The notes: generated by a model from the sequence alone, not told the origin. Positions 18,301 to 39,200 are shown, counted from the stretch's first letter. The stretch: DNA of 64,000 nucleotides from Mytilus californianus (GCF_021869535.1 NW_026262581.1:35402001-35466000); one strand, 5' to 3'. A program made the numbers and translations.

Positions 18301-19494
18301 CATGTGAGGTGTGGCGTGGCTATGGTACAGTCTTGTTCAGATAGTCAAAGGTCTGAAAAGAAACAAAATCATAATCTTTTACAATGGAAATTTCCAATCC
18401 ATTATATATTTAAATTTATTCTACATTGAATGGTACTGGATAATATTATGATTCTTCGTGCAATTAAACCGTTTAAGACACTTTGATTTTTTTTTGTTAA
18501 ACCACAAGTGTTATTAATATTTTAAAAGTATTAGTCAAGTCCCTTAGCTTAACAGATAGCGAACCTTTTTTTCTAAAGTAATGAACTTAAAATTATAGTT
18601 TACATCTCTTCTATCTAAGCTAGTGAGGTAACATTTAAGGGCACAACTGACACATCAACATAAGGCTCGATTGCAAATAAGACAACTATCATATAAAGAC
18701 TAACATACAGCTATGTACACACATATCTTCTTCAACATTGAGCAAAACCCATACCATATACACTTGTAGTTAGTACAAAAGTGCCCAAGATAACAAAATG
18801 TAAAACAATTCACCAGAGAAAACCAACGACCATATTTAAGCTAATAACTTTAAATGTGAAATTACTACCGCAGACAGCAACCAACGACACCCACTGGATT
18901 AGGGGCTCCTTGCTTGTGACAAACATTAAGAATGTGGAAGGGATAAACATGTTTCTAAACACAAAATCAGATCGTTACTAATGAAGTATATATGTATATA
19001 CAAATAATTATATGTTTTTGGGAACTTAAGATATACTCTTTTATTACGCAAGTGTGAAAAATCATTTATATCTCAAAATTACCGGGAGAAAGATATCTAC
19101 AATCGATGGTCGTGATTTTGAAAATTTGTTAATAATTTTCCAAATTTGTTAGAAATTTGATTTGTTTTGATTGGATACTCTAGGTATACAAACTGATTTG
19201 ATTCGAACGTTACTATAATGTAGACCAATCGCGCTTCTAGCGTAATATATTATAAGCCAAGTTTATTTGATATAGTTTTTACAAGGGTGTCACCAGTTCT
19301 GTAGTCAGTACATCTGTGTTGACATGAAATGATACGATAATATTCTGTAAATTTTCTTCTCTTCAATTTTGATTTTTCGACAAACTTAAGTTTTTCGACC
19401 CTAGACATCGCATTAGTCTATTTGGCACAACTTTTCTAAATTTCTGGTTTTCAATGATCTTCAATTTTGTATTTGATTTTGTTGTTCCAACTGA

Positions 19495-21814: not shown

Positions 21815-22032
21815 CTATACATACTTTGTTTCGCAAGTAAAGAGAGAAAGCGAACCGCATGGGCTATCATTCCACAAAAAACCCAACTTAGCATGCACAT
21901 TTACACAATCTTCCATATTATCATTATTGTTTGGTTCTCCACCAGCCCAATTAGATAGAGTGATATTTCTATTATCACTCGTCCATACAAAAGTTCCTTC
22001 ATTATCTGTGTCTGTTCCACCGAGCCAAAAAG
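21815..22032 (-). CDS. C-type lectin, last exon (T-FWLGGTDTDNEGTFVW...NWAGGEPNNNDNMEDCVNV...LWNDSPCGSLSLFTCETKYV*)
   Basis: Canonical CTLD second half with WLGG, W, EPN, EDC, WND and C..C. Phase-1 acceptor (ttcattcaaag) at 22033. Stop TAG at 21815-21817 with AATAAA hexamers near 21742-21755. An alternative GTATGT donor at 21824 could lead to another terminal exon. Confidence 0.93.
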
Positions 22033-23757
22033 CTTTGAATGAAATCAAAATTGAAATCGATGACTGTAATTTGTATAAATTATCATTTGTTATTACCATA
22101 TAGTTATTTTTAAATGTATATATAAATCATATTAAATACTTCTTCTAAAATTTCCATAATTAGGAACCATGTACTGTAATTGATAACAATGGCTTCTGGT
22201 GATTTTTGTGACAGTTTATATTTTATACGCAGTTTTTATCGAACTAATTGCATCCTTTGTTAATTTAACGCATATGCATGAGCATTACAAAATACTGTAA
22301 GAGGATAATATTTGAATAAAAGGTATTGTCAAGATTAAAGAGTGCGTAATCGCGAAGACATTTAATAACCCTTTCCCTCCGACACGTTTTATTTCAAACA
22401 CGTATATAATTCTCTTACAGTGCTTTAATTGTTTAAAAATCGGAAAACACACGTATGTCCATCAAAACTTATATTAACCATGATCTAATTACATCCTTCA
22501 TTATATCTAGCATCGTCCTGGCAAGTTAAAAGTACTTTTGATCCAACGGCCACTTATATCTTTCCACAAATGCATACCTTTGCATTGGTAGTTTAACGTT
22601 AATTAATATCTAATTTATTGATAAACATGCATGGTCAATATTAATATTTTCCAGCGTTTCGATCAATATAGCTGGAAATGTACAAAGACTCGGTTAGTTG
22701 TCCATTTTTTTGTTGTTGATTTTTCAGTATACCGATATGGATAGCAAACTACACATTGCTAGAAAACAATAATTATTGATGCCAATATAAACAAACGTTA
22801 ATAATGTAATACAGATAGACCGGAAATACGAAAAAAAATTTGCAAAACATTGTTTAACAAAATTTTAATCTGCTAACCGAGTCCCTGTGGAAAAATGTTG
22901 TATTGTCGGCAGGCAATCGTTAATTTTCGAAAGGACTATTTTTAACTGGCCAATCAGGGGGTCTTGTTGTCATATTTAAGGTGGGTTCGTTTGCAGTTTT
23001 TCCTGGTCTGCCTTGACTATCATTGAGGTGAAATTTGTCAAACGTACAGCTTCTTTTATGTTATTGAATAATTTCAATTGATTACTGTTTTATGCCCAAC
23101 CTACGATAGTAGAGGGGCATTATGTTTTCCGGTCTGTGTGTCCGTTCGTTCGTCCGTCCGTTCGTCTGTCCCGCTTCAGGTTAAAGGTTTTGGTCAAGGT
23201 AGTTTTTGATGAAGTTGAAGTCCAATCAACTTGAAACTTACACATTTTCCATATGATATGATCTTTCTAATTTCAATACCAAATAAGAGTTTTGACCACA
23301 ATTTCACGGTCCACTGAACATAGAAAATGATAGTGCGTGTGGGGCATCCGTGTACTATGGACACATTCTTGTTATGTTTATTTCACGATATCTAACGATT
23401 ATGTTTAATATACAATTATATCTGGCGTCCATCACGCACGACGGGCTGTCAGCAAACTTGAATTTGCGTTTGAATTATTTATTTTTCTGTCATGTGTACG
23501 ATGTAGGTGTTATTGGCGTTCTGTCAATGGCAGAAAAGGGTGACTGTCATTTGTGTGTCTGTCGTCTAAGGTATAGATAATACATTATATTTATTATACT
23601 AAAGGAACGATATTATCGGGGTCTCAAACTAAAAGATATATAGTTTAGATTGTGCAGGTAGTTCTGTTGTTAGCATATTAGCTTTTACATTCATTTTTCT
23701 TTTTTCGTTTATGTAAAAATGCATTGTGTGTGCACTATTGAAAATTATTCCAATTAT

Positions 23758-24543
23758 AATAAAGAGCTGCGCCATGAGCGCATGATACGCCCGTCGCTTT
23801 TTCAAAGAATAAAGTTCCAGAACTACTCAATGTCATATCAGAAATTTATATAAAAAAAGAACTAAAGGGAGTTTATTTTAATAGATATAAACCAATCACC
23901 ATTGCTCAAAGCACTTTTGAGTTATTGTCCGAAAAGTCCATATTTAGTATGGACAGTATTTCTGGATCTTTGTAACGCTTTTGATTTTCTAAATCATGAA
24001 CAATTTACTGATCCTTCATAAATAACAAAAATACTTTTCTTACACTTCACTACATTGGTTTTCTTCATATTTGGCCGATAGACATCAGGTCGTATCCATT
24101 CCAAAACTTTATTGACCCAAGTTTCTTAATAATTTCTGAATTAACAGAGAATTTAATAAAAGACCTTAAAATATAGATCGTGCATTAATTGTTTTCTCTC
24201 TAAAAAGGTACAACTCAGAAATGTATTCAAAAGCAACGAGAACATCTTAAATCAACAAATTAATAACACATCCTAAACCTAGATTTGAATCGTTTTGGTG
24301 TTAGTATCTTTTTTTTTAATTTTCTTTGGACAGTCACAGAAAGAATGTGGCGGGGTAAAACAAACATGTTCGTGAGAGCTCAAATTTGATAACAAATTTC
24401 TTGAAGCTATTATTTGTGGTTCCTGAGATAAATGCGACGGAAATTAAATAGGACAGAAGGACATACGGACGGACGGACATAAGGACGGATGGACAGACAG
24501 GCTAAAACAGAATACCCCCTCCTTCGGAGTATGGGTATACAAA
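23758..24543 (+). mobile_element. Helentron/pearl-like non-autonomous element in a lectin intron
   Basis: 5' hairpin gctgcgccatgagcgc, 3' (GGAC)n microsatellite, then a terminal hairpin ataccccctccttcggagtatgggtat. Confidence 0.6.
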
Positions 24544-24658
24544 TAAACTGTTAACTTATCAATAATAATATCATCATACGAATGTATTATAAAACTTATC
24601 AAACGCTTGTGATAAGCGTTTGACATAATATTTATTTGCTCTAGTAAATATAACTTAC

Positions 24659-24752
24659 TGCCACTCCTAGATCTAGCTATGTCACTGATATAATCTATCT
24701 CTGATTGTGTTACAGGTTCTGAAAGTTTAGCGCCGAGGTACATACAGCTTGC
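24659..24752 (-). CDS. C-type lectin, middle exon (ASCMYLGAKLSEPVTQSEIDYISDIARSRSG)
   Basis: tgtttcag acceptor and GTAAGT donor. 94 nt, phase 0 in, phase 1 out. Matches the CTLD helix pattern C...GA.L.......E..YI. Confidence 0.9.
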
Positions 24753-25399
24753 CTGAAACAAAGTATACATCTTAAAATAATAACACACTTTGTGTGGTGT
24801 TTTACTGTAGTTGTAGTAAAACAACGTAATTCAAAATTATTGAAACGTAAAGCAAGGGTATTTAAAAAATCAAGTTTATATTTGATACCGTAAACGTGTT
24901 TTAGATTAACATTTAACAGGTACGCACAAGACCACACTTTTGGAAGATAAAATGTTCGAGAGCACAAAAACAGAAAGGGCCTTAACAGAACATCCAAAAT
25001 CTTCTACGGTCAAATGTCGTTTTGTGGTCAATCATATAATTAAGATAAACTCTAAAAAGGCTTAAATTAGTTTCTTAAACTTTTATTATGACGCGAATAG
25101 ACAAAGCAGGTTGTAATTTAACGATCGGTAATACTAAACAAGATAACAAAATTTTGAGAAAAAAAACAGTATGTCCGGGCTTAGATGATAGCTTATCACA
25201 TTCTGATTTTGAAAATACAATGTTTGAGGCACTTTTTTCATCAATTAAGGGAGACAATAAGCTACTTCCGGTTACATCAAAGTCACCTCCGGTGTCAAAT
25301 AATAGCTTATTTTACTCTGATTCTAAAAATATATATTTTCCATATACTTTTGCTTTAAATAAGGGAGATAAATAGCTTCTTCCGGTTTAAAAAGATCAC

Positions 25400-26050
25400 T
25401 TCTGGTTGACATTTTCAAGGTCATATGTCTACTAACCTAACGCAAAAGATCCCATGGCTTTATCATGTATAAATATGAATCAACAGCAAAGGTCAAAATC
25501 TACAACGTCAATTTTACCTTTGACCTCGAACTGAATTTCAAGGTCATAAAGCAAGGACCTCAAATCAAATGACCCTTAGTCTCCACTATGTAAGGGAAAT
25601 GAGTTCTATCCCAATACAGCTTATTTTGAGTATTAGAGGGGATGAAATCCCCATCAAATGTCAACGCACCCTTTTTACCAAAATATGTATGTTACGGCAT
25701 GTCGCAAATATCAGTTTAGTAAAAATATTTTGACGATATCTCATACGGTTTCTAAAAAGAAGCAATATTAAGCCAAAATAAAAATTTATAATTTAACCTT
25801 GACCTTTGACCTTGACCCTATTTTCTTTTTGGTGGACCAAGGACCTCAATTCAAAAGACCCTGGGTCTCTATCACTTATGGTTTACCAGTTACAGTTACA
25901 TTTCACTTATTTTAAATACAGAAGTGGGAAGAACTCTCATATGGAGTCTCAGGAGCGCTGCGGTCAAAATTATTCTTAAGATCCTGAGGATATAATGAGC
26001 AAATTGGTGAAATAATTTTGTCGTAATCTTTAACGGTTGCGAATAATAAT
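25400..26050 (+). mobile_element. Degenerate pearl/Helentron-like element with gacctttgaccttgacc motifs
   Basis: Repeated tcaaggtca/tgacct motifs and duplicated ggacctcaa(a/t)tcaaa(a/t)gaccc cores; ends gaataataat. Confidence 0.45.
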
Positions 26051-26328
26051 CAGAACAAATTCAATAGGTCTTTGCACAGAAAAGTTGAAAGCCTAATTAT
26101 CATTAAAAAATCAATAGGTCTTTCCATAGAAAAGTGGAAAGACCTAATAATGTAATGATAAAATTGACAAATAATACGGTTAGTCCTGCAATTATTTATG
26201 TTACTATACAAATATGAGTGTAAAGATGAATAATGCAATAATGAAATATTAATATACAAGTATCGATTTTATGAATCCTACTTCTTTAATTATCCAACAG
26301 TAATATGTTATCTTAAGGTACTACGTAC

Positions 26329-26414
26329 CTTGGCAGTTTCCCAGTCCTCAGATGTTGTGCTGAAGAAATAGCAATTTGAACCCGGAAGATAAAGCCATCC
26401 ACTTTCACACGGAG
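26329..26414 (-). CDS. C-type lectin, first CTLD exon (x-PCESGWLYLPGSNCYFFSTTSEDWETAK); absent from the ORF track
   Basis: tattttacag acceptor and GTACGT donor. 86 nt, phase 1 in, phase 0 out. C..GW......CY.F......W..A is the long-form CTLD start. Confidence 0.92.
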
Positions 26415-26780
26415 CTGTAAAATATATAACAAACTTTAAGAAATAAATGCAAACAATGAATAAGTATTTGTTTTACGATATAATCATAGTAATATATGAC
26501 GACAAACAAAACAAAAACGATTTGAAACACAAACATAAGAAATATGCATCGATAAAAAATGTCCCAAAAAGCAAATTATAGAATTGCCTTTCCATAACAT
26601 CATTGTCATGAAAATTGTTTGGACGAGTATTGTGAAAATAATTGTATAAAGTTCGAGATTGCATGTTAGTTACGTAAGCGCGTCACTGTTTGTAGTGTCT
26701 GTCGTTGATGGAATATGTCGTTGTTGTTCTGCGGTTTGCATGTTGTGTCGACTATCATATTATGTGTTTGTGCTATATTT

Positions 26781-27102
26781 CTGTCACGTAGTGTTGTCAT
26801 TTTACCGATATTTTTTAACATTGTCATAAAGCGGGAGGTTTGGCTAGCCATTAAACCAGGTTCAACCCACCATTTTTTCTTAAAATGTCTTGTACCAAGT
26901 CAGGAATATGGCAGTTGTTATCAAATAGTTCGTTTCTATGTATGTTGGAGTTTGTTTTTGTTGCACTTCAGTGTTCCTGTTGTTCCTTTGTTTTCCTCTT
27001 ATAGTTGATGTGTTTCCCTCGGTTTTAGTTTGTAACCCGGATTTGTTTCCTCTCAATCGATTTATGACTTTTGAACACCGGTATGCTACTGTTGCCTTTA
27101 TT
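26781..27102 (+). repeat. Repeat family R1 copy
   Basis: Matches 654-975. Confidence 0.8.
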
Positions 27103-28483
27103 CAGATAAACGAAAACACCTAATGAGCGTTATCGATTCTTATTAAGGCTTCATTCCCGTCTACTTTGTATGCAATGGGTTTTAACTTATTCAAGAATAG
27201 CAATTCAAGATTTCTTCAAAATATTATTTATTCTTTGCAGTGGATTTCTACTGAATATAGGCAACAATGTTAGATGTATGAAAAATCTCGAGAAAATCAC
27301 TTCCCGCCAAATTTTCAATGGCTTATATCTCGAAAACAAGCACACGGGTCCTTCAATTTTTTCTGCTTTTTAAGTTCCTTTATTCATATACTTTCAATTT
27401 ACAAGTCTTTTAAAAAGCTTGTTATTTTGAAACAGAGTAGCGAACATCCTTAAGCTAATTTGTTGGTCGTGAAAATGAAACTTGTTAAATATTAGCGTCA
27501 ATACAGAAGTGCTGACTACTGGGCTGGTGATACCCTCAGGAAAAAACCTCCACCAGCAGTGGTATCGACTCAGAGGTTGTGAATAAACTCATCATAGTTA
27601 CCAGGTTAATTTTGAGGTTGCCAGACGCGCCTTTCGTCTTCAAAAGACTTCTCAGTTATGCTCGAATGAAAAAAAGTTAAAAAGACCAATGAAAGTACGA
27701 AGTTGAAGAGCATTTAGGACATAAAATTGCGAAAGGTTTCAAATTCAAATTATAAAATTCCCCAATATTTGACGCTGAACGTTAAGCAATTCTTAATCAA
27801 TAACCCCAGCCAATTTCGTTGTTTTAAATTTTTCTACAGCTTCTAATGTACACTTTAACACCATGACAGGATTTCCTAAATGCTTGTATTTTTCAGCAGC
27901 ATAAAGGTATAAATGCATTTTAATACAAATATTGCTGACTTCTGTTTTTTTTGGGAGAGGAAGAGGACTTTCTTTGTACAGGGCATGTCTTAAATTTGTG
28001 ATATATTTAGATAACTTTAATAAATATATCATAAGGTTAATGATAAATGAGATAACACATCGAAAATATATTTTCGCTTTCCCCTGCTCTTAATTCTTTT
28101 TTTTTTGTTATTTATTTTCCAAATCCTTGCTCATGTCTGGAGTCTGCTCCTACAGTAGTTAAACATAAGAATTTTATCTACTTAGCAAAAGTTATGATTT
28201 ATCTAAAGAATAGAAAAACAAAGGATATGGGGTATCCATCCATGACAAAAAATCAGTGCATGCGCAGCAAATAACACACAAAAAGCAAAGGAACAGCGCT
28301 TTAATTGCCATTCTTCATCTCAAAGTCACAGTGAGGCCTTCAACACGGAGCAAAAAAACCCCTCACCTCACTGCAAGTTTAAGACGGCCCTAGCACCTGT
28401 TGGAGCGGAATACTTTGCAAACTGAAATAATTCGGGTAGACATTGAAAGATGTAACACAAATTTAAAGCTACAATCGTCCTAC

Positions 28484-28532
28484 CTTGTGTAATCATGATA
28501 ATAATCAGGAACGTAAACATTTTGTAACTCAT
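28484..28532 (-). CDS. Signal-peptide first exon, copy A1 (MSYKMFTFLIIIMITQ + G), intact
   Basis: ATG at 28532, hydrophobic core FTFLIIIMI, phase-1 donor AG|GTAGG, and TATAAATA 61 nt upstream. Confidence 0.72.
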
Positions 28533-28592
28533 GTCGACAGTCATATATGCGCAACGTGCATTCATCATTATCGTACACGATCTGTGGTTCCT

Positions 28593-28600
28593 TATTTATA
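28593..28600 (-). promoter_or_regulatory. TATA box (TATAAATA) of copy A1
   Basis: Consensus TATA at a plausible distance from the signal-peptide ATG. The same box is present at 31198-31205. Confidence 0.55.
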
Positions 28601-29334
28601 TCATAAGATGTTTTATGCAATTAAATTATTAAATTCATTTAATGTGTGCAACAGGAGAATGAAATTGTTAAAAAAAGTAAAATCACAAAAATACTGAACT
28701 CCGAATACTTAAACGATTCTTTAGATACAATTTTATTCCGTCTCATGACATAGTTAATGTTATATAAATCGCATTATTTTAAAATGTGTGTATACAAATT
28801 TGCAAAGCATGTTAACAAAAAAAACCATTGACTTCAAAAAATGAAAACAACTTGTTATAAATTTAATATGTCCGAAGTGCTTTTCTGGAGAAGTTTTTGC
28901 ATATTAATTATAAATAATTCGAAAAACAACGCATTACGATTAACGTCGACATGTAATATAAATTGTTAATTCAAAATTTCAAAGAACACATGTTTTCAAT
29001 AGAATGTTTGAAGAAAACAAAGGTTCAAACTTTCTCAGACAAAGTCGGCTTCAGATGAATAAAGTTATTTTCTTTAGGTTCCGTTTTGGTCATATAGCTT
29101 CTTCAGTTTATAGGCATTTATTACTTCCGGCTTTCCAATGTTTAGGTTTAATGATTTCTGATGAAGACAAATCTAGTAAAGCGCTCAAGGCGCACGAAAT
29201 ATATAAAGTGTTATTTCTTTCTACCTCTTTACCTTACAACAACATATAACCCATACTCCACACCAAAATTTCACTTTCCATATATGCTTTATTAGATTGT
29301 CTTAACATATATTTAAATATCATATCATAATTAC

Positions 29335-29448
29335 CGTAACAACACTTCTTATGATGACAGCACCCATGCCCATTGACCGATGTTTCTGTAGATAAACATT
29401 CCCTTTTACACGTTCCATTCAGAGCAGAACATCGTGTGCCATGCACGT
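29335..29448 (-). CDS. Beta-defensin-like Cys-rich module exon B1 (D-VHGTRCSALNGTCKRECLSTETSVNGHGCCHHKKCCY-x)
   Basis: ttccttag acceptor and G|GTAATT donor. 114 nt, symmetrical phase 1-1. Cys spacing C-x6-C-x3-C-x11-CC-x4-CC resembles the big-defensin C-terminal beta-defensin domain. Confidence 0.8.
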
Positions 29449-29867
29449 CTAAGGAATACATTCGAAAAAGGTAATTAAACTAGTTTGTTGGTCGTAATAA
29501 TGAAACTTATTGAATGTTAGCGCCTTGTATAACTTTTCTTTTTCTTAAATTGTCCGTTAAACTAGAGGGATTTTTTTACAGAATGTTGGATATTTGATTA
29601 TCTGTGGAATGTTTGAACAATTTTATTATTTATAAATTAGTATTCTTGTGTTCAATTAACAAGGACTCGCGGAATCCAAGTCCGATAAAATTTGTTCAAT
29701 TGACTGTTTTCCTCTGGATTGTTACCTCTTGCGGAAGCACGTTTAAAATCCGACACCATATATCAATTACGTTTAAAGTGTGATATATTCATATTTCATT
29801 CACATGATTTTGTTCTGAATATTCAGACATGCAATAAACTCATCATAGAAACCAGGATTAAAATTTT

Positions 29868-29916
29868 GTACGCCAGACGAGCGTTTTGTCTTTAAATGAC
29901 TCATCAGTGACGCTCA
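29868..29916 (-). ncRNA. Degenerate type I hammerhead core (G12A); duplicated at 36130-36177
   Basis: gcgtca-CTGATGA-gtcatttaaagac-AAAA-cgctcg-TC-tggcgt: everything is in place except GAAA>AAAA. Confidence 0.65.
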
Positions 29917-31088
29917 AATCAAAAAATTTAAAAATGCCAAATAAAGTATGAAGTTGAAGAGCAATAAAGACAAAATTCAGAAACGTTTTGCCAAATACAG
30001 CTACGGTAATTTATTCATAGGGTAGAAGATCCTTAGTATTTCGAAAAATTTAAAGTTTTATAAACAGTTAATTTATAATTATGACCATATCAATGATAAT
30101 TCATGTCAATACAGAAGTGCTGACTACTGGACTGGTGATACCCTCAGGAAGAAACCTCCACCAGCAGTGGCATCGACAAAAGTGGTTGTAAATAAACTCA
30201 TCATATAGATACTAGGATCAACGTTGAGTACGCCAGACGCGCCTTCAAAAGACTCATCAGTGATGCTCGAATGAAAAAAGTAAAGAAAGGCCAAAAAAAG
30301 TCCGAAGTTGAAGAGTAGTGAGGACTCAAAATTACGAAATGTTTCAAATTCAAATTTTAAATTCCGCAATATTTGACGCTGAACGTTAAGCAATTCTTAA
30401 TCAATTATCCCAGCCAATTTCGTTGTTTTAAAATTTTCTACAGCTTCTAATGTATACTTTAACACCATGACAGGATTTCCTAAATGCTTGTATTTTTCAG
30501 CAGCATATAGGTATAAATGCATTTCAATACAAATATTGCTGACTTCTGGTTTTTTGGGGAGAGGAAGAGGACTTTCTTTGTACTGGGCATGTCTTAAACT
30601 TGTGATATATCTAGATAACATTCATAAATATATCATAAGGTTAATGATTAATGAGACAACACATCGAAAATATATTTTCGCTTTCCCCTGCTCTTAATTC
30701 TTTTTTTTTTGTTATTTATTTTCCAAATCCTTGCTCATGTCTGGAGTCTGCTCCTACAGTAGTTAAACATAAGAATTTTATCTACTTAGCAAAAGTTATG
30801 ATTCATCTATAGAATAGAAAAACAAAGGATATGGGGTATCCATCCATGACAAAAAATCAGTACATGCTCAGCAAATAACACACAAATAGCAAAGGAACAG
30901 CGCTTTAATTGCCGTTCTTCATCTCAAAGTCACAGTGAGGCCTTCAACACGGAGCAAAAAAAAACCTCACCTCACTGCAATTTTAAGACGGTCCTAGCAC
31001 CTGTTGGAGTGGAATACTTTGCAAACTGAAATAATTCGGGTAGATATTGTAAGATGTAACACAAAAGCAAAAGCTACAATCGTCCTTC

Positions 31089-31137
31089 CTTGTGTAATCA
31101 TGATAATAATCAGGAACGTAAACATTTTGTAACTCAT
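31089..31137 (-). pseudogene. Signal-peptide first exon copy A2, splice donor mutated GT>GA
   Basis: Same 49-nt coding segment as A1. The donor reads AG|GAAGG (31088-31087). TATA is intact at 31198-31205. Confidence 0.7.
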
Positions 31138-32509
31138 GTCGACAGTCATATATGCGCAACTTGCATTCATCATTATCGTAAAAGATCTGTGGCTCCTTAT
31201 TTATATCATAAGATGTTTTATGCAGTTAAATTATTAAATTCCTTTAATGTGTGCAACAGGAGAATGAAATTGTTAAATGATTCTTTAGATACAATTTACT
31301 TCCGTCTAATAACACAGTTAATGTTATATTAATCGCATTATTAATGTTAGTATACAAATTTACAAAGCGTGTTAACAAAAAAAACCCATTGACTTCAAAA
31401 AATGAAAACAACACGTTATTAATTTAATGCGTCCGAAGCGCTTTTCTGGAGAAGTTTTTGCATATGAATTATAAATCATTCGAATAACAATGCATTACGA
31501 TAAAGCGTCGACATATAATAAAAATTGTTAATTTAAAATTTCAAAGAACACATGTTTTCAATATAATATTTGCAGTATTCATGACGTGTCGCAACAATAA
31601 CTTCACTTGAAACGCTTGAAATAATCAATAAGATATGCAACTGCATAAGACGTTTGTAAACATCAACAACAAAAGGACTAAAACAAAACAGTCAAATCTT
31701 CAATCTACTGGCATGATTTATCATTCTATGTGCATAGCAGTATAAAAAATGTTAAATCATACTTTTCAAATGAGATTTTTAGATAATCTCCTTTTAAGGT
31801 AAATTTCTGAAGAAACAGCTCGGCTAGAGTACGGTTAATTGTTTGTAATAACATAAAGGTTTACAGTACCAATTTTACTGACAAATACTCATTTCAAAAA
31901 TTAATGGTATTAGTGAGACTCGGGCCCAAACATATTTGAAAATCAAAATTCAAACGTTGATAGGCTTCATCTGCACATGTGTGTCTTACTCTGATACTCA
32001 GCTAGAAATCAGATATGGGAATAATTAGAAGTTCATGAAACGCTAACGAGGTAAACTAAATAACCTGTGGATCAAACTTGACAGATAGACCTTTGAAACG
32101 CTATAGATTGTTATCTGGACTGTTTAACATTCGTTCGTATAAATTTATTAAAAATTCCGCATACGAAGTATGGTATTATTGATGCTTATATGTTCAAAGC
32201 AACTGCTTTCGAAAGTTGAAAAAAATGAAAATGATACTTTAAAGATTGTGTGCGTCCTCTGCGATTTCTGATCAACCCACATCAAGAACGTTAAAACCCA
32301 AACAAATGAATAATGTTTAAACACAAGTTGCTTTTTAAAAAAAAAGTCAATACGTGAACCTAAGAACTTTTTTATGCTAATTATTATTTCAACTGAATTG
32401 TAAATGGTATCTCAGTATTTTCATTACCATGTGTGTGTGGAGGATAATATTTTCTTTTTATTGTAAATCAGGACAATTATGGCATGTTGAGAGTGATGTT
32501 AAATATAAA

Positions 32510-32630
32510 GAAGGGAGATAAGGAATGTTTTTATTTCAATAGTTCATTCCTGGATGGTGTTAGCTTTCATTTTTACCAGTTTGACTACTACCAATGGATG
32601 ACACTTCTAGGGTGTTTATTGGTAGAGGTA
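32510..32630 (+). pseudogene. Highly decayed Penelope-like RT fragment inside the W block (also about 34385-34505 and 39890-40015)
   Basis: ggagataaggaatgttttta...ttcctggatggtg...tctagggtgtttatt resembles YDKRDDF...FPFLDG...SYGVYI. Resemblance is by eye only. Confidence 0.35.
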
Positions 32631-32966
32631 ATATTTCACCTAGAATCCTTCAGTAAATTTATATATTTTTCTTTTTAAAATACATATTATGGAGCAATAA
32701 CGATATTTTGTTTCATAAAATGTGGAAGTTTTATTCCTACCAAATAAGACAAAATCTACTTGCTTCCCATTTTATTTTGTGCCGTAAAATCTTCTTCATC
32801 TCAAAGTCACAGTGAGGCCTTCAACACGGAGCAAAAAAAAAACCTCACCTCACTGCAAGTTTAAGACGGCCCTAGCACCTGTTGGAGCGGAATACTTTGC
32901 AAACTGAAATAATTCGGGTAGATATTGTAAGATGTAACACAAAAGCAAAAGCTACAATCGTCCTAC

Positions 32967-33015
32967 CTTGTGTAATCATGATAATAATCAGGAACGTAAA
33001 CATTTTGTAACTCAT
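32967..33015 (-). CDS. Signal-peptide first exon copy A3, donor intact, TATA mutated (TATGAATA at 33076-33083)
   Basis: ATG at 33015 and AG|GTAGG donor at 32966. It is the nearest upstream intact donor for exon B1. Confidence 0.6.
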
Positions 33016-34843
33016 GTCGACAGTCATATATGCGCAACTTGCATTCATCATTATCGTAAAAGATCTGTGGCTCCTTATTCATATCATAAGATGTTTTATG
33101 CAGTTAAATTATTAAATTCCTTTAATGTGTGTAACAGGAGAATGAAATTGTTAAATGATTCTTTTGATACAATTTACTTCCGTCTAATAACACAGTTAAT
33201 GTTATATAAATCGCATTATTAATGTTTGTATACAAATTTACAAAGCGTGTTAACAAAAAAAAACCCATTGACTTCAAAAAATGAAAACAACACGTTATTA
33301 ATTTAATGCGTCCGAAGCGCTTTTCTGGAGAAGTTTTTGCATATGAATTATAAATCATTCGAATAACAATGCATTACGATAAAGCGTCGACATATAATAA
33401 AAATTGTTAATTTAAAATTTCAAAGAACACATGTTTTCAATATAATATTTGCAGTATTCATGACGTGTCGCAACAATAACTTCACTTGAAACTCTTGAAA
33501 TAATCAATAAGATATGCAACTGCATAAGACGTTTGTAAACATCAACAACAAAAGGACTAAAACAAAACAGTCAAATCTTCAATCTACTGGCATGATTTAT
33601 CATTCTATGTGCATAGCAGTATAAAAAATGTTAAATCATACTTTTCAAATGAGATTTTTAGATAATCTCCTTTTAAGGTAAATTTCTGAAGAAACAGCTC
33701 GGCTAGAGTACGGTTAATTGTTTGTAATAACATAAAGGTTTACAGTACCAATTTTACTGACAAATACTCATTTCAAAAATTAATGGTATTAGTGAGACTC
33801 GGGCCCAAACATATTTGAAAATCAAAATTCAAACGTTGATAGGCTTCATCTGCACATGTGTGTCTTACTCTGATACTCAGCTAGAAATCAGATATGGGAA
33901 TAATTAGAAGTTCATGAAACGCTAACGAGGTAAACTAAATAACCTGTGGATCAAACTTGACAGATAGACCTTTGAAACGCTATAGATCGTTATCTGGACT
34001 GTTTAACATTCGTTCGTATAAATTTATTAAAAATTCCGCATACGAAGTATGGTATTATTGATGCTTATATGTTCAAAGCAACTGCTTTCGAAAGTTAAAA
34101 AAAATGAAAATGATACCTTAAAGATTGTGTGCGTCCTCTGCGATTTCTGATCAACCCACATCAAGAACGTTAAAACCCAAACAAATGAATAATGTTTAAA
34201 CACAAGTTGCTTTTTAAAAAAAAAGTCAATACGTGAACCTAAGAACTGTTTTATGCTAATTATTATTTCAACTGAATTGTAAATGGTATCTCAGTATTTT
34301 CATTACCATGTGTGTGGAGGATAATATTTTCTTTTTATTGTAAATCAGGACAATTATGGCATGTTGAGAGTGATGTTAAATATAAAGAAGGGAGATAAGG
34401 AATATTTTTATTTCAATAGTTCATTCCTGGATGGTGTTAGCTTTCATTTTTACCAGTTTGACTACTACCAATGGATGACACTTCTAGGGTGTTTATTGGT
34501 AGAGGTAATATTTCAACTAGAATCCTTCAGTAATTTTATATATTTTTCTTTTTAAAATACATATTATAGAGCAATAACGATATTTTGTTTCATAAAATGT
34601 GGAAGTTTTATTCCTACCAAATAAGACAAAATCTACTTGCTTCCCATTTTATTTTGTGCCGTAAAATCTTCTTCATCTCAAAGTCACAGTGAGGCCTTCA
34701 ACACGGAGCAAAAAAAAAACCTCACCTCACTGCAAGTTTAAGACGGCCCTAGCACCTGTTGGAGCGGAATACTTTGCAAACTGAAATAATTCGGGTAGAT
34801 ATTGTAAGATGTAACACAAAAGCAAAAGCTACAATCGTCCTAC

Positions 34844-34880
34844 CTTGTGTAATCATGATAATAATCAGGAACGTAAACAT
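34844..34880 (-). pseudogene. Signal-peptide exon copy A4 with an 84-bp deletion removing TATA and MSYK
   Basis: aaacat is joined directly to aagatg via CAT microhomology. Relative to A1, 28521-28604 is missing. The second ATG (MFTFLIIIMITQ) and the GT donor remain. Confidence 0.7.
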
Positions 34881-35610: not shown

Positions 35611-35724
35611 CGTAACAACACTTCTTATGATGACAGCACCCATGCCCATTGACCGATGTTTCTGTAGATAAACATTCCCTTTTACACGTTCCTTTCAGAG
35701 CAGAACATTGTGTGCCATGCATGT
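35611..35724 (-). CDS. Beta-defensin-like module exon B2 (D-MHGTQCSALKGTCKRECLSTETSVNGHGCCHHKKCCY-x); no upstream first exon found
   Basis: Same splice sites and 114-nt length as B1, with 3 substitutions. Confidence 0.7.
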
Positions 35725-36219: not shown

Positions 36220-39200
36220 AAATTTGAAAACTTTCTTCTTATATGATTTGGCACCTTTTTTTTAAATTTATTTATTTCCTTATTTGTAATATGAATAACA
36301 GTGTGTTTAAGCAGTATCCACTAATCTTCTTTCTTTTGGTACCTCGTCTGTCTGTATCTCAGCAGATGAGAAAAACACAGCATTTCTAACATACAATGTA
36401 GCATTTTCAACCATCAAACTGTTGTGTTACTTTAACGCATTCGTATTATGTGGCCAAAATGCTTCCTTTATTCTTTTTGTCATTAAATGTTGCACCATTG
36501 TATGTCCTGTGTGTCTCTGATATTTGTGATAAAGATGGCAGCGGTTATGGTTACTGGAGCAGATCAGTAATGGTAATTGGGATTTTGTTATAGGTAGACC
36601 GTAAAACAACAAAGCTGTGTTCTTTAATGTAGCACAACAGTTTAAGGAAAGGAACTGTTTATGTTAAAAATGGTGTAGCTTTGTTAAGTTAAAGAAAATT
36701 TAATGTTAGTCACCACTGTCTTCTTTTTTTTCGGTTTCCATTCGTCAGATTTTCATTTTATAGGAATTTTAGTTCCTTTGTTGAATATATCTGCGAAGAT
36801 CCGTATATTGTATAATTCTCTTGTATGTAAGTAATTTTGCGGTTCATTTAACGATATCCATTCTTTTCATTTGATTTTTGCCTGCAGGTATTTCATACAA
36901 CTACAAATAGATTACTTTATGTAGTTGTATTTCTAAGGAATGTAACAGAAAATTTATTAGTTTTAATTTATAATTTATAAAGTTTATTAAAAGTTCATTA
37001 ACCTTTGCTTATGATACTAAATAAGAATAGCATTGATGTCTCAAGATGTCAGTGGTTGTCTTAAGTTGTATTTTAATATTTTGTCCCTTTGGGAATTTTG
37101 GTGTGAATTACAAATGTTTGATGGCCTCTGTTTCATTTTAATATCTCAAAAATATGTGTTCAAGAACTCTAACTTGACTTAGTGTTTCTCTCCATCGTTC
37201 ATAGGCCAGTAAAAAATGGAAATACATAACAGTGTTTGGTTCTATTAATAAGGTATAGTACATAAAATTTACTTTTATTAAACTTTGGACATACAATTGA
37301 ATACAAATAGCAATAATGTTGCAAGTACGTGCCATAATATTTAAAGAAACAAAAATATATTTTGAATATTAAGTATATTCGGATGTATTTCAGAGGATTT
37401 ATACTTAATTACTTACGAATAATTCAGAAAACTATTATTGAATATTGGACTATCAAAATTTTTGTTCTAAATTGAATTTGTTTTTTCAATTTTCAAACAA
37501 AAGCAGAAATATATTTTCTTTTTTAGCACTTTGAACTATCATAAGTCGTTCCTACAGTGTACGTTTCATTTCCGGTATATTGAATAATATATAAATTGAA
37601 AAATGCACCAGCAAGTATTATTATTTATATTAGGAAAATCAAGAATATCCCGAATCTTGAGTACAATATCTGGTGTAATAGAAAGAGCTGCTTTCACTGC
37701 ATTTTTTTAACTTTTTTTTTATTTAAGCGTCACTGCTGAGTCTTTTATAGACGAAACGCGCGTCTGTCGTACACAGTATTTATGTTGATTTTATTCACTG
37801 TATGAGGGTTTCCACGTTTGAATCCTCTCATTAACAATCAGAAATAAAAATTGCTTCAACTGAGAAATAAAATAAAAGAACGATCTAAAAGTGTAAAATA
37901 TGAGTACCAATTGTTCTTTATTTAATCCACACATTGATCATCTACAAAGAAATGTGCAGATTGTATTAGCAGATAATGTTCTTCTACAAGACATTTTGGA
38001 CTTAAATAACCCTGAACAACACTGTTTCATTTCGTTTTTTACCATTTTAAAACCAAAAACTGAAAAACCGATAAAATTTTAATAACAGATGCTAGCAATT
38101 TAACTGAAAAAGCATTAGGGAGACTCACACATGTGCAAAGAACATTCTTTTTACGAGAACTGTTCATGTTAAGCCGTATTATTGAACTTATGCCCTCCTT
38201 TTTAAGGGTCAGTTGAATCCTGCCATTTTTTTATGAAGCATTTGCAGAGATTCTACTGCATTTTGGGATTCAACATATCTACAAATAACGTAATACTAGA
38301 TTACTTCCCAGTGGTTTGATTAAGTAATTACTTAATCCCTTACCCTATCCCCTTTGGCTTGGTCAAGTGTATCATATTCCACTTTTTTCGAATGAAGTTG
38401 ATGATATATCTTGTTTAGGGTAAATGCAAAAAGCGTTTAGGCCTCATAATACTTATAGCGTTATTTTAAGTTATGACACTCGGATGAAGTCGCTGCTGTT
38501 TGGTTTTTGTCCCCGAGGTTGTTATGCATTACATCAATTTTCGTTGATAATATTAAAATTTAAAACAAAATAATAAAGAATCTAATGTTACCAATCCCTC
38601 AGGCAAGATAGAACAAATATGGTTCTGGCTATTTAATTAGGTCTTTATTGTCGCTCAGCTCTGCAGTGTTTATACATTACTTGTTTCTTTTTTCTTCTTC
38701 AGTTTTTGTTTCCAGTATACCCGATGAGGTTATTCCAGAAAAGCTCTTTAGAAGCCAAAAAAGTTATTATGTCAATTTATTTGAAAGACTCTGTACATTT
38801 ACTTTCAACTTTTCTAAGTTATTGTTGAAGTTAAATCTTGTTCTAATGCATATACTTTTGTCTACTGACTTCATATTAACGTGACTTTTGTAAAACAAAA
38901 TTGGTATTTTTTGTAGTTTGTTTGCTGTTTGATTAAAGAATATTTCTTGTGTCATAACAGCATATTTAGAAATGAAAAACATAACAAAAATTCATATAGA
39001 CAATTGTAAAATGAATTACTTTTTCATATATGGAGACATAGACACGAACACATTACAAGTTGCAATTTCTTTTATCGGGAAATATGTAAGAAGGATGATT
39101 ATTGAATAATTTTGTTTCAAAATTGAATTCAAGGAACCTTAGTCTTCTTTTCAATTATATAGAACACTTTTCAATATTTCTTTTCGGAATTTTTTTTCAA

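What the first reader, a model, noticed from the sequence alone, without database searches (positions are those of the whole stretch)
21815..33015. Candidate beta-defensin-like / C-type lectin fusion gene
Seen: the minus-strand exons A3 (32967-33015), B1 (29335-29448), CTL1 (26329-26414), CTL2 (24659-24752) and CTL3 (21815-22032) all have canonical GT-AG sites with compatible phases (1,1,0,1). Together they give 561 nt and 186 aa: MSYKMFTFLIIIMITQDVHG-TRCSALNGTCKRECLSTETSVNGHGCCHHKKCCYAPCESGWLYLPGSNCYFF...EPN...WND...CETKYV. The A+B junction completes a well-formed signal cleavage site (V-H-G at -3/-1). The alternative, A1 spliced directly to CTL1 (148 aa), would put Pro at +1 after TQA. Known: EPN/WND CTLDs bind mannose/glucose-type sugars with Ca2+, and big defensins carry a beta-defensin domain with C-x6-C-x3-C-x13-C-x4-CC-like spacing. 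Inference: a secreted protein joining a microbial-glycan sensor to a cationic defensin-fold module, a possible recognise-and-attack effector. I do not recall this architecture being described but cannot search.
Basis: partly seen in the sequence, partly recalled or inferred. Interest (0 to 1): 0.85.

Follow-up and report, generated by a model that had tools for sequence, protein, structure and literature searches.

The report
Mussel lectin with defensin-like head
This is a real, expressed California mussel gene, already in RefSeq as "perlucin-like protein", whose secreted sugar-binding lectin carries a small seven-cysteine module resembling a beta-defensin; no annotation or paper I could search describes that combination, and its function is untested.

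Summary
The five minus-strand exons exist at the stated coordinates with GT-AG sites and compatible phases, and give 561 nt and 186 aa.

- **Source and annotation.** The window is Mytilus californianus. RefSeq XP_052082186.1 ("perlucin-like protein", 192 aa) uses the same exons. It differs only in a start codon four codons upstream and a 16-nt extra 3' coding exon.
- **Transcript evidence.** A 225-nt contig from one public run joins signal exon, B1 and CTL1 at the exact boundaries with no mismatch.
- **Ancestral layout.** M. coruscus has a 90% identical annotated orthologue with a single A-B-CTL1-CTL2-CTL3 layout. The four A copies and two B copies in this window are therefore recent duplications.
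- **A mobile exon.** B is a 114-nt phase 1-1 exon. In M. galloprovincialis the same A-B cassette is joined to an unrelated 12-cysteine tail.
- **Defensin link.** This is suggestive, not proven. Pfam Defensin_beta_2 is the only family hit (13.6-22.5 bits, cut-off 22.2). The only PDB sequence hits are helianthamide and human beta-defensin 106. A phase-1 intron precedes the exon. The AlphaFold models of B are poor.
- **Function.** The "recognise-and-attack" role is untested, and the whole mature protein is acidic.

I found no paper describing this architecture. Two notes from this scan on the same window (duplicated first exons; shuffle-ready exon) agree with these results.

The parts
32967..33027 (-). 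Exon 1 coding part (copy A3). ATG at 33027 (RefSeq) or 33015 (reader). It encodes the signal peptide and ends in phase 1 with an intact GT donor.
   Evidence: It has the full promoter block collinear with M. coruscus. The 55-nt A part of the X1 transcript contig is identical in A1, A2 and A3.
29335..29448 (-). Exon 2 (B1). A 114-nt symmetric phase 1-1 exon encoding the signal-peptide end and the 34-residue seven-cysteine beta-defensin-like module.
   Evidence: The whole exon lies inside the spliced contig of run X1 (table 8, record 1). Pfam PF13841 is its only hit.
26329..26414 (-). Exon 3 (CTL1). Start of the long-form C-type lectin domain, with the N-terminal cysteine hairpin.
   Evidence: It is joined directly to B1 in the X1 contig.
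24659..24752 (-). Exon 4 (CTL2). Middle of the lectin domain.
   Evidence: The M. coruscus orthologous exon is 91/94 identical.
21815..22032 (-). Exon 5 (CTL3). It carries the EPN and WND motifs. The read-through stop is at 21817-21815. RefSeq instead splices from an internal GTATGT donor after 21825.
   Evidence: AATAAA lies 61 nt after the read-through stop.
18337..18352 (-). Coding part of the terminal exon used by the RefSeq and M. coruscus models. It gives the alternative C-terminus K-PLTI.
   Evidence: With this exon the six-exon CDS translates exactly to P0011.
31089..31137 (-). Copy A2 of the first exon. It is collinear with intron 1 and B1, but its donor reads GA in the reference.
   Evidence: DNA contigs of X5 and X6 laid here show the GT form (table 3, place 31087).
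28484..28532 (-). Copy A1 of the first exon. It is intact but lies downstream of B1 inside intron 2. It could give a plain 148-aa lectin if spliced to CTL1.
   Evidence: No read evidence for an A1-to-CTL1 joint was seen.
34814..34880 (-). Copy A4 of the first exon. It is 5'-truncated and has lost the first ATG region.
35611..35724 (-). Copy B2 of the defensin-like exon. The AG/GT sites and reading frame are intact. It has 3 nonsynonymous and 0 synonymous differences from B1, and no collinear first exon upstream.

Best explanation
This is a real Mytilus californianus gene for a secreted two-module protein of about 168 residues once processed.

How it is made. Transcription starts at a duplicated promoter and first-exon unit: A3, or A2 if its donor is intact in the individual. 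The signal-peptide exon is spliced to B1, a 114-nt phase 1-1 exon. B1 is spliced to three exons encoding a long-form C-type lectin domain, with an optional tiny sixth coding exon.

What the product looks like. The mature protein begins with a 34-residue, seven-cysteine, mildly cationic knot. Six of those cysteines follow the beta-defensin (trans-defensin) framework. The knot abuts the lectin domain with no linker. The lectin domain has a complete EPN/E/WND calcium site 2, so mannose/GlcNAc/fucose-type sugar binding is expected.

How it most likely works. It is a soluble pattern-recognition lectin whose N-terminal module adds a second surface. That surface could bind microbial membranes or LPS, or the unpaired seventh cysteine could form a covalent dimer.

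How it arose. The module is a mobile exon. The same signal-exon plus B cassette is joined to a different cysteine-rich tail in M. galloprovincialis, and the cassette has been segmentally duplicated in this window.

Shown: the gene model, the splicing, the lectin fold, the modular exon and its narrow distribution. Inferred: the defensin fold and homology, the sugar specificity and any antimicrobial or dimerising role.
For: Gene model and splicing:
- Exon arithmetic and splice sites check out.
- XP_052082186.1 is reproduced exactly, and locus L002 is identical to the window.
- The X1 contig of 225 nt lies as 26359-26414 | 29335-29448 | 28484-28538 with 0 mismatches. Unique intron bins of that run have zero depth, so the run behaves as RNA.
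- The M. coruscus orthologue CAC5419524.1 is 90% identical. Its locus has a single A and a single B upstream of CTL1.

Lectin domain:
- Lectin_C scores 69.5 bits against a cut-off of 22.6.
- AlphaFold gives pLDDT 80-96 over the lectin domain. Foldseek's top hits are SIGN-R1, DC-SIGN, CD23 and langerin CRDs at E about 2e-9.

B module:
- An exhaustive phmmer search of 1.84 billion representatives finds only three proteins, all Mytilus or mussel-like.
- The M. galloprovincialis paralogue has a homologous signal exon, a 114-nt phase 1-1 B exon and a different terminal exon.
- PF13841 is the only Pfam hit for all five B-family members, at 13.6-22.5 bits against a cut-off of 22.2.
- The only PDB sequence hits are helianthamide (E 0.034 and 0.074, six cysteines aligned) and beta-defensin 106 (E 9).
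- ESM Atlas structural neighbours of residues 25-60 include three beta-defensin clusters with TM 0.65-0.78.
- A phase-1 intron lies just 5' of the cysteine-rich exon, as in big-defensin and beta-defensin genes (PMC7203481).
- All seven cysteines are kept across species, while 5 of 6 substitutions in B are nonsynonymous.
Against: - Transcript support is one short contig at depth 5.4 in one run labelled only 'RNA?'.
- The one confirmed RNA-seq run (X10, 6% sampled) has zero reads on the exons.
- The window's B scores below the Pfam cut-off. Profile and single-sequence PDB hits are not significant.
- AlphaFold gives pLDDT 50 for B alone and about 60 in context, and Foldseek finds nothing for B alone.
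- ESM Atlas neighbours also include unrelated beta fragments.
- B has a seventh cysteine and an N-glycosylation sequon (NGT).
- B is an internal exon, unlike the terminal exon of defensin genes.
- B is only +2 to +3 in the lectin fusion, and the mature protein has pI 4.9-5.4. No processing site would free the module.
- Magnificamide shows that a beta-defensin fold need not be antimicrobial (PMC6835510).
Confidence: 0.62

Rival explanations
1. The gene model is right, but B is not a defensin relative. It would be a young, Mytilus-restricted cysteine-rich spacer whose cysteine spacing resembles defensins by convergence. Its job would be structural: a rigid stalk, or a covalent dimerisation piece using the unpaired seventh cysteine.
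For: - The B family has only three representatives in 1.84 billion proteins, and no standalone peptide form was found.
- The total cysteine count is odd in both architectures: 13 and 19.
- Pfam and PDB hits are sub-threshold.
- The AlphaFold models of B are poor.
- The whole protein is acidic.
Against: - Among 24,736 Pfam families the only hit for every B member is a beta-defensin family. Among 177,635 PDB sequences the only hits are two beta-defensin-fold peptides with all six cysteines aligned.
- The phase-1 intron position matches defensin genes.
- In the divergent copy on L003 the extra cysteine is the one replaced, by W, so the six-cysteine core is the conserved unit.
Confidence: 0.28
2. 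The main product of the locus is the plain 148-aa lectin made from the nearer first exon A1 spliced straight to CTL1. B1 inclusion from the upstream promoter would then be a minor isoform left over from the recent duplications.
For: A1 has an intact ATG and GT donor and about 440 bp of the ancestral promoter. It lies between B1 and CTL1.
Against: - The only transcript contig seen contains B1. All X1 depth in the A bin is accounted for by that single contig.
- RefSeq gives one model, with B.
- The ancestral single-copy layout in M. coruscus has no A exon between B and CTL1.
Confidence: 0.1
3. The protein is not an immune effector. The N-module would act as an enzyme or channel ligand, like sea-anemone beta-defensin-fold peptides. 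Alternatively, the protein is a shell-matrix or byssus lectin of the perlucin type.
For: - The best PDB sequence hit is helianthamide, an alpha-amylase inhibitor.
- Magnificamide lacks antimicrobial activity (PMC6835510).
- RefSeq names the protein perlucin-like.
- Expression is absent from the one sampled RNA-seq run, so it is tissue-restricted or low.
Against: - The segment of helianthamide that I recall (from memory, not checked here) as its inhibitory motif aligns to unrelated residues in B.
- EPN-type soluble lectins in bivalves are mostly treated as immune recognition proteins (general knowledge).
- No tissue data were obtainable either way.
Confidence: 0.12

Closest known systems
Molluscan single-domain secreted C-type lectins ('perlucin-like'), with vertebrate mannose-type CRDs (DC-SIGN, SIGN-R1, langerin, CD23) as structural references
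   Same: A signal peptide plus one long-form C-type lectin domain with six cysteines and EPN and WND motifs. Pfam Lectin_C scores 69.5 bits, and Foldseek's top hits are these CRDs.
   Different: It carries an extra 34-residue seven-cysteine N-terminal module on its own exon. None of the ESM Atlas or PDB structural neighbours aligns over that part.
[quoted passage not shown]
   Same: A six-cysteine framework ending in CC, mild positive charge, and a phase-1 intron directly 5' of the cysteine-rich exon (PMC7203481). Pfam Defensin_beta_2 is the sole family hit, and there is a weak full-length alignment to human beta-defensin 106.
   Different: - It has a seventh cysteine and an N-glycosylation sequon.
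- The exon is internal and symmetric instead of terminal with a stop.
- It lacks the big-defensin hydrophobic N-domain and any propeptide cleavage site.
- Scores are below the curated cut-off for the window's copy.
- It is covalently fused to a lectin domain.
Helianthamide and magnificamide (sea-anemone beta-defensin-fold alpha-amylase inhibitors)
   Same: Helianthamide is the best and nearly only PDB sequence match. All six cysteines and a G-x-C-K...C...E...G-x-G-x-C...CCY pattern align.
   Different: - E-values of 0.03-0.4 are not significant.
- The anemone peptides are free, acidic 44-mers.
- There is no evidence that B inhibits any enzyme.
M. galloprovincialis VDI09863.1 / VDI09862.1 (uncharacterised, 115-116 aa)
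   Same: A homologous signal exon and a 114-nt phase 1-1 B exon (67% identity in B) with the same splice-site context.
   Different: The third and last exon encodes a 51-residue, 12-cysteine acidic tail with no Pfam match instead of a lectin domain.
Bactericidal C-type lectins such as the RegIII family (functional analogy, from general knowledge)
   Same: One secreted polypeptide that both recognises microbial glycans and could damage the microbe.
   Different: In RegIII proteins the lectin domain itself does the killing. Here a separate module is proposed to do so, and nothing has been tested.

Membership tests
C-type lectin-like domain (Pfam PF00059), calcium-dependent mannose-type CRD | Sequence match to the family model above the curated cut-off | tested here: met
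   Lectin_C scores 69.5 bits against a cut-off of 22.6, over residues 76-183 and profile positions 2-107 of 107.
C-type lectin-like domain (Pfam PF00059), calcium-dependent mannose-type CRD | CTLD fold | tested here: met
   The AlphaFold model has pLDDT 80-96 over the domain. Foldseek gives at least 500 PDB CRD hits, the best being SIGN-R1 and DC-SIGN at E 2.4e-9 with TM by target 0.82-0.85.
C-type lectin-like domain (Pfam PF00059), calcium-dependent mannose-type CRD | Four core cysteines plus the long-form N-terminal pair; EPN, a downstream E and WND as calcium site 2 ligands | tested here: met
   Read directly from the translation. There are six cysteines in the domain, and EPN, E-D-C and WND are present and conserved in M. 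coruscus.
C-type lectin-like domain (Pfam PF00059), calcium-dependent mannose-type CRD | Calcium-dependent binding of mannose/GlcNAc/fucose-type sugars | not testable with these tools
   This needs recombinant protein and a glycan array with and without EDTA.
Beta-defensin / trans-defensin (Pfam PF13841, PF00711) | Six-cysteine framework with a terminal CC | tested here: met
   Cysteines sit at mature positions 3, 10, 14, 26, 27, 32 and 33. Six of them align to all six cysteines of helianthamide and of beta-defensin 106. The extra one is position 26, and it is W in the copy on L003.
Beta-defensin / trans-defensin (Pfam PF13841, PF00711) | Sequence match above the curated cut-off | tested here: inconclusive
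   PF13841 is the only hit for all five B-family members. B1 scores 17.8 bits, B2 16.5, M. coruscus 16.6 and M. galloprovincialis 13.6, against a cut-off of 22.2. Only the L003 copy reaches it (22.5 bits, partial profile).
Beta-defensin / trans-defensin (Pfam PF13841, PF00711) | Three-stranded antiparallel sheet with C1-C5, C2-C4, C3-C6 disulfides | tested here: inconclusive
   - AlphaFold on B alone gives pLDDT 50 and no Foldseek hit.
- In the full-length model B has pLDDT about 60 with three short strands.
- The ESM Atlas model's neighbours include three beta-defensin clusters (TM 0.65-0.78) among unrelated rows.
- Disulfide connectivity is not testable here.
Beta-defensin / trans-defensin (Pfam PF13841, PF00711) | Phase-1 intron immediately 5' of the cysteine-rich exon | tested here: met
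   The A exon ends in phase 1 six codons before the first cysteine. The same holds in M. coruscus and M. galloprovincialis. The criterion comes from PMC7203481.
Beta-defensin / trans-defensin (Pfam PF13841, PF00711) | The cysteine-rich exon is the last coding exon, and the product is a free small peptide | tested here: not met
   B has no stop and ends in phase 1. It is spliced to further exons in all three species. No standalone signal-plus-B peptide was found.
Big defensin | Hydrophobic N-terminal domain preceding the beta-defensin-like domain | tested here: not met
   The signal peptide is followed directly by the cysteine-rich module. There is no PDB sequence hit to big defensin structures at E up to 10.
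Antimicrobial peptide (functional class) | Direct killing or membrane permeabilisation of microbes | not testable with these tools
   Only charge could be computed. B is +2 to +6, and the whole mature lectin fusion is -4 to -8.

The most novel reading that the evidence does not exclude
B is a true beta-defensin-family exon that has become a free-moving symmetric (1-1) cassette in mussels. In M. californianus and M. coruscus it has produced a natural defensin-lectin chimera, in which a glycan-binding domain delivers a defensin knot to microbial surfaces. Elsewhere the same cassette has been joined to other partners. That would be a living example of the exon-shuffling route proposed for the origin of beta-defensins from big defensins, and a natural 'targeted defensin'.
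Probability: 0.25. Interest if true: 0.7.

Novelty: new variant of a known kind. Interest (0 to 1): 0.45.

Why it matters
**Immune diversity.** Bivalves build immune diversity by expanding and recombining lectin and antimicrobial-peptide genes. If the N-module is a working defensin-type domain, this gene is a compact natural design that couples glycan recognition to an effector knot in one chain. That would interest invertebrate immunologists and people engineering targeted antimicrobial peptides.

**Evolution.** The 114-nt phase 1-1 exon is found with two different 3' partners and is caught mid-duplication in this window. It is a concrete, testable case of defensin-like exon mobility, and it bears on how beta-defensins spread to new gene contexts.

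**Annotation.** The practical point is smaller. Current annotation calls this protein only "perlucin-like" or "C-type lectin domain-containing" and misses the N-terminal module.

Tried and rejected
- **Folding B alone.** AlphaFold2 on B with a five-sequence alignment gave pLDDT 50, and Foldseek against PDB found nothing. This is unusable, not evidence against the fold.
- **ESM Atlas replicates.** Structure searches for the M. coruscus and M. galloprovincialis proteins failed because the Atlas holds no model of them. Feature searches gave no usable hit.
- **More B relatives.** The word-indexed search found only the query. It found no standalone signal-plus-B peptide of 32-101 aa.
- **ESM Atlas shape search.** The two-domain model returned only plain lectin-domain matches, and none covered the N-module.
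- **RNA-seq run X10.** It had zero reads on any exon in the 6% sampled, so it gives no junction counts and no tissue information. Runs X5 and X6 turned out to be DNA.
- **Stretch limits.** The laid stretch had to stop at 32249, so A3 and B2 were not covered by reads.
- **Wrong tool.** The bacterial promoter and terminator scan does not apply to an animal genome, and I disregarded it.
- **Literature.** Searches for the accessions and for defensin plus C-type lectin fusions found nothing relevant. A M. californianus larval RNA-seq paper mentions perlucins but cannot be tied to this gene.
- **Big-defensin origin.** I considered and set aside a specific origin from big defensins. B has no hydrophobic N-domain and no sequence hit to them.
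- **Amylase inhibition.** I considered and set aside a helianthamide-type alpha-amylase inhibitor role. The similarity is confined to the cysteine scaffold.

Full report
**1. The observation**

A script confirmed their lengths of 49, 114, 86, 94 and 218 nt, AG/GT at every internal boundary, and a 561-nt frame of 186 codons ending in one stop. The window has no N and 32% G+C.

**2. Whose gene it is**

A protein search with the 186-aa model found a 184-aa Mytilus coruscus protein, CAC5419524.1. It is 90% identical over 180 residues and has the same three parts: signal, B and lectin domain. Its 90% cluster also holds XP_052082186.1, "perlucin-like protein [Mytilus californianus]", 192 aa.

The locus of that RefSeq protein (L002, GCA_021869535.1) is base-for-base identical to window 41027-10337. 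So the window is M. californianus.

The RefSeq protein is reproduced exactly from window exons 33027-32967, 29448-29335, 26414-26329, 24752-24659, 22032-21825 and 18352-18337.
- RefSeq uses an in-frame ATG four codons upstream.
That donor leads to a 16-nt terminal coding exon and a C-terminus of K-PLTI instead of KYV.

An AATAAA lies 61 nt after the read-through stop, so both 3' ends may be used.

**3. Transcript evidence**

One read-laying run was allowed, and I placed it on 26250-32249. In run X1 (same species label, 2017) a 225-nt contig at depth 5.4 lies as 26359-26414, then 29335-29448, then 28484-28538. It has no mismatch or gap, and 56 + 114 + 55 = 225 (table 8).

That is CTL1 joined to the whole of B1, joined to a first exon, exactly at the predicted boundaries. 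The 55-nt first-exon part is identical in A1, A2 and A3. The tool's placement on A1, which lies downstream of B1, is therefore arbitrary, and an upstream copy must be the source.

X1 is labelled only "RNA?". However, its unique intron bins have zero depth and its exon bins are fully explained by this contig, which is what an RNA library gives (table 2).

Caveats:
- It is one contig in one run.
- The only certified RNA-seq run (X10, 6% read) has no read on any exon, so expression is low or tissue-restricted.
- X5 and X6 are DNA.

**4. The duplications**

On the minus strand the order is B2, A4, A3, A2, B1, A1, CTL1, CTL2, CTL3.

The M. coruscus locus has one A, one B 1.2 kb downstream of it, then CTL1-3, with no A between B and CTL1. 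Block-by-block comparison shows three things:
- A2, intron 1 and B1 are collinear with M. coruscus.
- A3 is a 1.88-kb tandem copy of the promoter and first-exon unit.
- A1, with part of intron 1, was inserted after the B block, and that B-A junction was then copied upstream to give B2-A4.

The state of each copy:

| Copy | State |
|---|---|
| A3 | Intact |
| A2 | Donor reads GA in the reference |
| A1 | Intact |
| A4 | Lost the first ATG region |

All DNA contigs of X5 and X6 laid at 31087 show the GT form. They may derive from A3, or the GA may be a variant of the reference individual (table 3). An X5 contig of 1041 nt spans the B1-to-A1 block junction, so the rearrangement is not confined to the assembly (table 8).

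This agrees with scan note s1-307229.

**5. The lectin domain**

Pfam Lectin_C scores 69.5 bits. AlphaFold2 of the mature protein gives pLDDT 80-96 over the domain. Foldseek's best PDB matches are the mannose-type CRDs of SIGN-R1, DC-SIGN, DC-SIGNR, CD23, langerin and mincle, at E about 2e-9.

The six cysteines of a long-form domain are present, as are EPN, the downstream E and WND. All are conserved in M. coruscus. From the established rules for C-type CRDs, this predicts calcium-dependent binding of mannose/GlcNAc/fucose-type sugars. That is an inference and was not tested.

**6. The B module**

*Composition.* The mature B has 34 residues, with cysteines at 3, 10, 14, 26, 27, 32 and 33. Its net charge is +3 (pI 8.6) and it contains an NGT sequon.

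*Distribution.* An exhaustive phmmer search of 1.84 billion representatives found only three proteins:
- the M. coruscus orthologue;
- M. galloprovincialis VDI09863.1 (115 aa);
- a 95-aa read-through ORF from an unidentified sample.

Word-indexed searches added nothing and found no standalone signal-plus-B peptide.

*The M. galloprovincialis gene.* It has a homologous signal exon and a 114-nt phase 1-1 B exon with the same donor context. A NAGNAG acceptor explains its two annotated isoforms. Its single further exon encodes a 51-residue, 12-cysteine acidic tail with no Pfam match. B is therefore a modular exon with at least two different 3' partners, which supports scan note s1-307240.

*Selection.* Between M. 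californianus and M. coruscus, B has 5 nonsynonymous and 1 synonymous changes (ratio about 1.4), against 0.57 for the lectin domain. All seven cysteines are kept. The counts are too small for a formal test.

**7. Is B defensin-like?**

Evidence for:
- Pfam Defensin_beta_2 is the only family hit for each of the five B-family sequences. Four of them cover the whole 30-position profile. Scores are 13.6-22.5 bits against a cut-off of 22.2, and the window's B1 scores 17.8.
- Among 177,635 PDB sequences the only hits are helianthamide (E 0.034 for B1, 0.074 for the M. galloprovincialis B, 0.44 for the profile) and human beta-defensin 106 (E 9). All six of their cysteines align, which leaves position 26 as the extra cysteine. 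Helianthamide belongs to the beta-defensin family (PMC6835510).
- In the divergent copy on L003, exactly that extra cysteine is W.
- The ESM Atlas's own model of the RefSeq protein, searched over residues 25-60, has three chordate beta-defensin clusters among seven rows (TM by query 0.65-0.78).
- The intron before B is phase 1 and sits just 5' of the cysteine-rich region. That is the feature used to link big defensins and beta-defensins (PMC7203481).

Evidence against:
- No score is significant on its own.
- AlphaFold2 is unsure: pLDDT 50 for B alone and about 60 in context, with three short strands.
- Foldseek found nothing for the poor B-only model.
- The other Atlas rows are unrelated beta fragments.
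- B is an internal exon without a stop.
- The hydrophobic N-domain that defines big defensins is absent.

I put the probability that B has a beta-defensin-type fold at about 0.6. Specific descent from big defensins is lower and untested.

**8. Function**

The parts and their order are shown. The mechanism is inferred.

The most economical reading is a soluble recognition lectin with an added N-terminal knot. Against a simple cationic-peptide attack role:
- The lectin domain is strongly acidic (-6 to -11).
- The mature protein has pI 4.9-5.4.
- No linker or dibasic processing site would free B.
- B carries a glycosylation sequon.
- A beta-defensin fold does not imply killing, since magnificamide has no antimicrobial activity.

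The odd cysteine count in both architectures (13 and 19) suggests an intermolecular disulfide. A dimerising role is therefore a serious alternative.

**9. Novelty**

The gene and protein are already in public annotation, as a plain lectin. No searchable paper mentions the accessions or a defensin-lectin fusion. No structural neighbour carries the N-module.

I class it as a new variant of a known kind: a C-type lectin with a previously unrecognised, probably defensin-type, shuffled accessory exon.

Another unchecked note of this scan (s1-330742, a different piece of the same genome) reports a beta-defensin-like module fused to a serine protease. If that is real, the shuffling theme would be broader.

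**10. Verdict**

| Claim | Verdict |
|---|---|
| Observation | Confirmed |
| Gene model | Confirmed, and already annotated |
| Defensin-like fold | Plausible but unproven |
| Effector function | Speculative |

Interest is moderate.

Noticed in passing
window 21819-21824 and 18337-18354: There is an internal GTATGT donor eight bases before the read-through stop, plus a tiny terminal coding exon. These give two possible C-termini, KYV or K-PLTI. RefSeq and the M. coruscus annotation both use the spliced form. An AATAAA lies 61 nt after the read-through stop.
   Followed up: partly
window 31087-31088: The donor of first-exon copy A2 reads GA in the reference. All DNA contigs of runs X5 and X6 laid there show GT. 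Either those contigs derive from the near-identical A3 copy, or the GA is a variant or error of the reference individual.
   Followed up: partly
window 35611-35724: The second copy of the defensin-like exon (B2) has intact splice sites and frame. It has three nonsynonymous and no synonymous differences from B1. No first exon lies upstream in collinear orientation, so it looks like an orphan exon.
   Followed up: partly
L005:8001-12516 (M. galloprovincialis UYJE01002336.1): This paralogous three-exon gene has the same signal and B cassette joined to a 51-residue, 12-cysteine acidic tail of unknown family. A NAGNAG acceptor at the B exon explains the two annotated isoforms.
   Followed up: yes
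L003:3029-3145 and L004:264-380: A divergent B-like exon from an unidentified sample is 72-78% identical in DNA. It has W in place of the extra cysteine and appears to have lost one base before the final CC. It is the only B copy that reaches the Pfam beta-defensin cut-off (22.5 bits, partial profile).
   Followed up: partly
window 26650-27650 and 28650-28850 (introns): These are very high-copy repeats. DNA word depth reaches about 2 million, and RNA-seq reads in X10 nearly all run on into unlike sequence. They are transposon-derived transcripts from elsewhere, not expression of this gene.
   Followed up: no
window 36220-38000: The sequence upstream of B2 matches the M. coruscus region upstream of the gene, but in inverted orientation.
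   Followed up: no
L001:1-3871 (M. coruscus): The upstream neighbour in M. coruscus is a sialate O-acetylesterase-like gene (Pfam SASA, SIAE_C) on the opposite strand. I did not look for it in the window.
   Followed up: no
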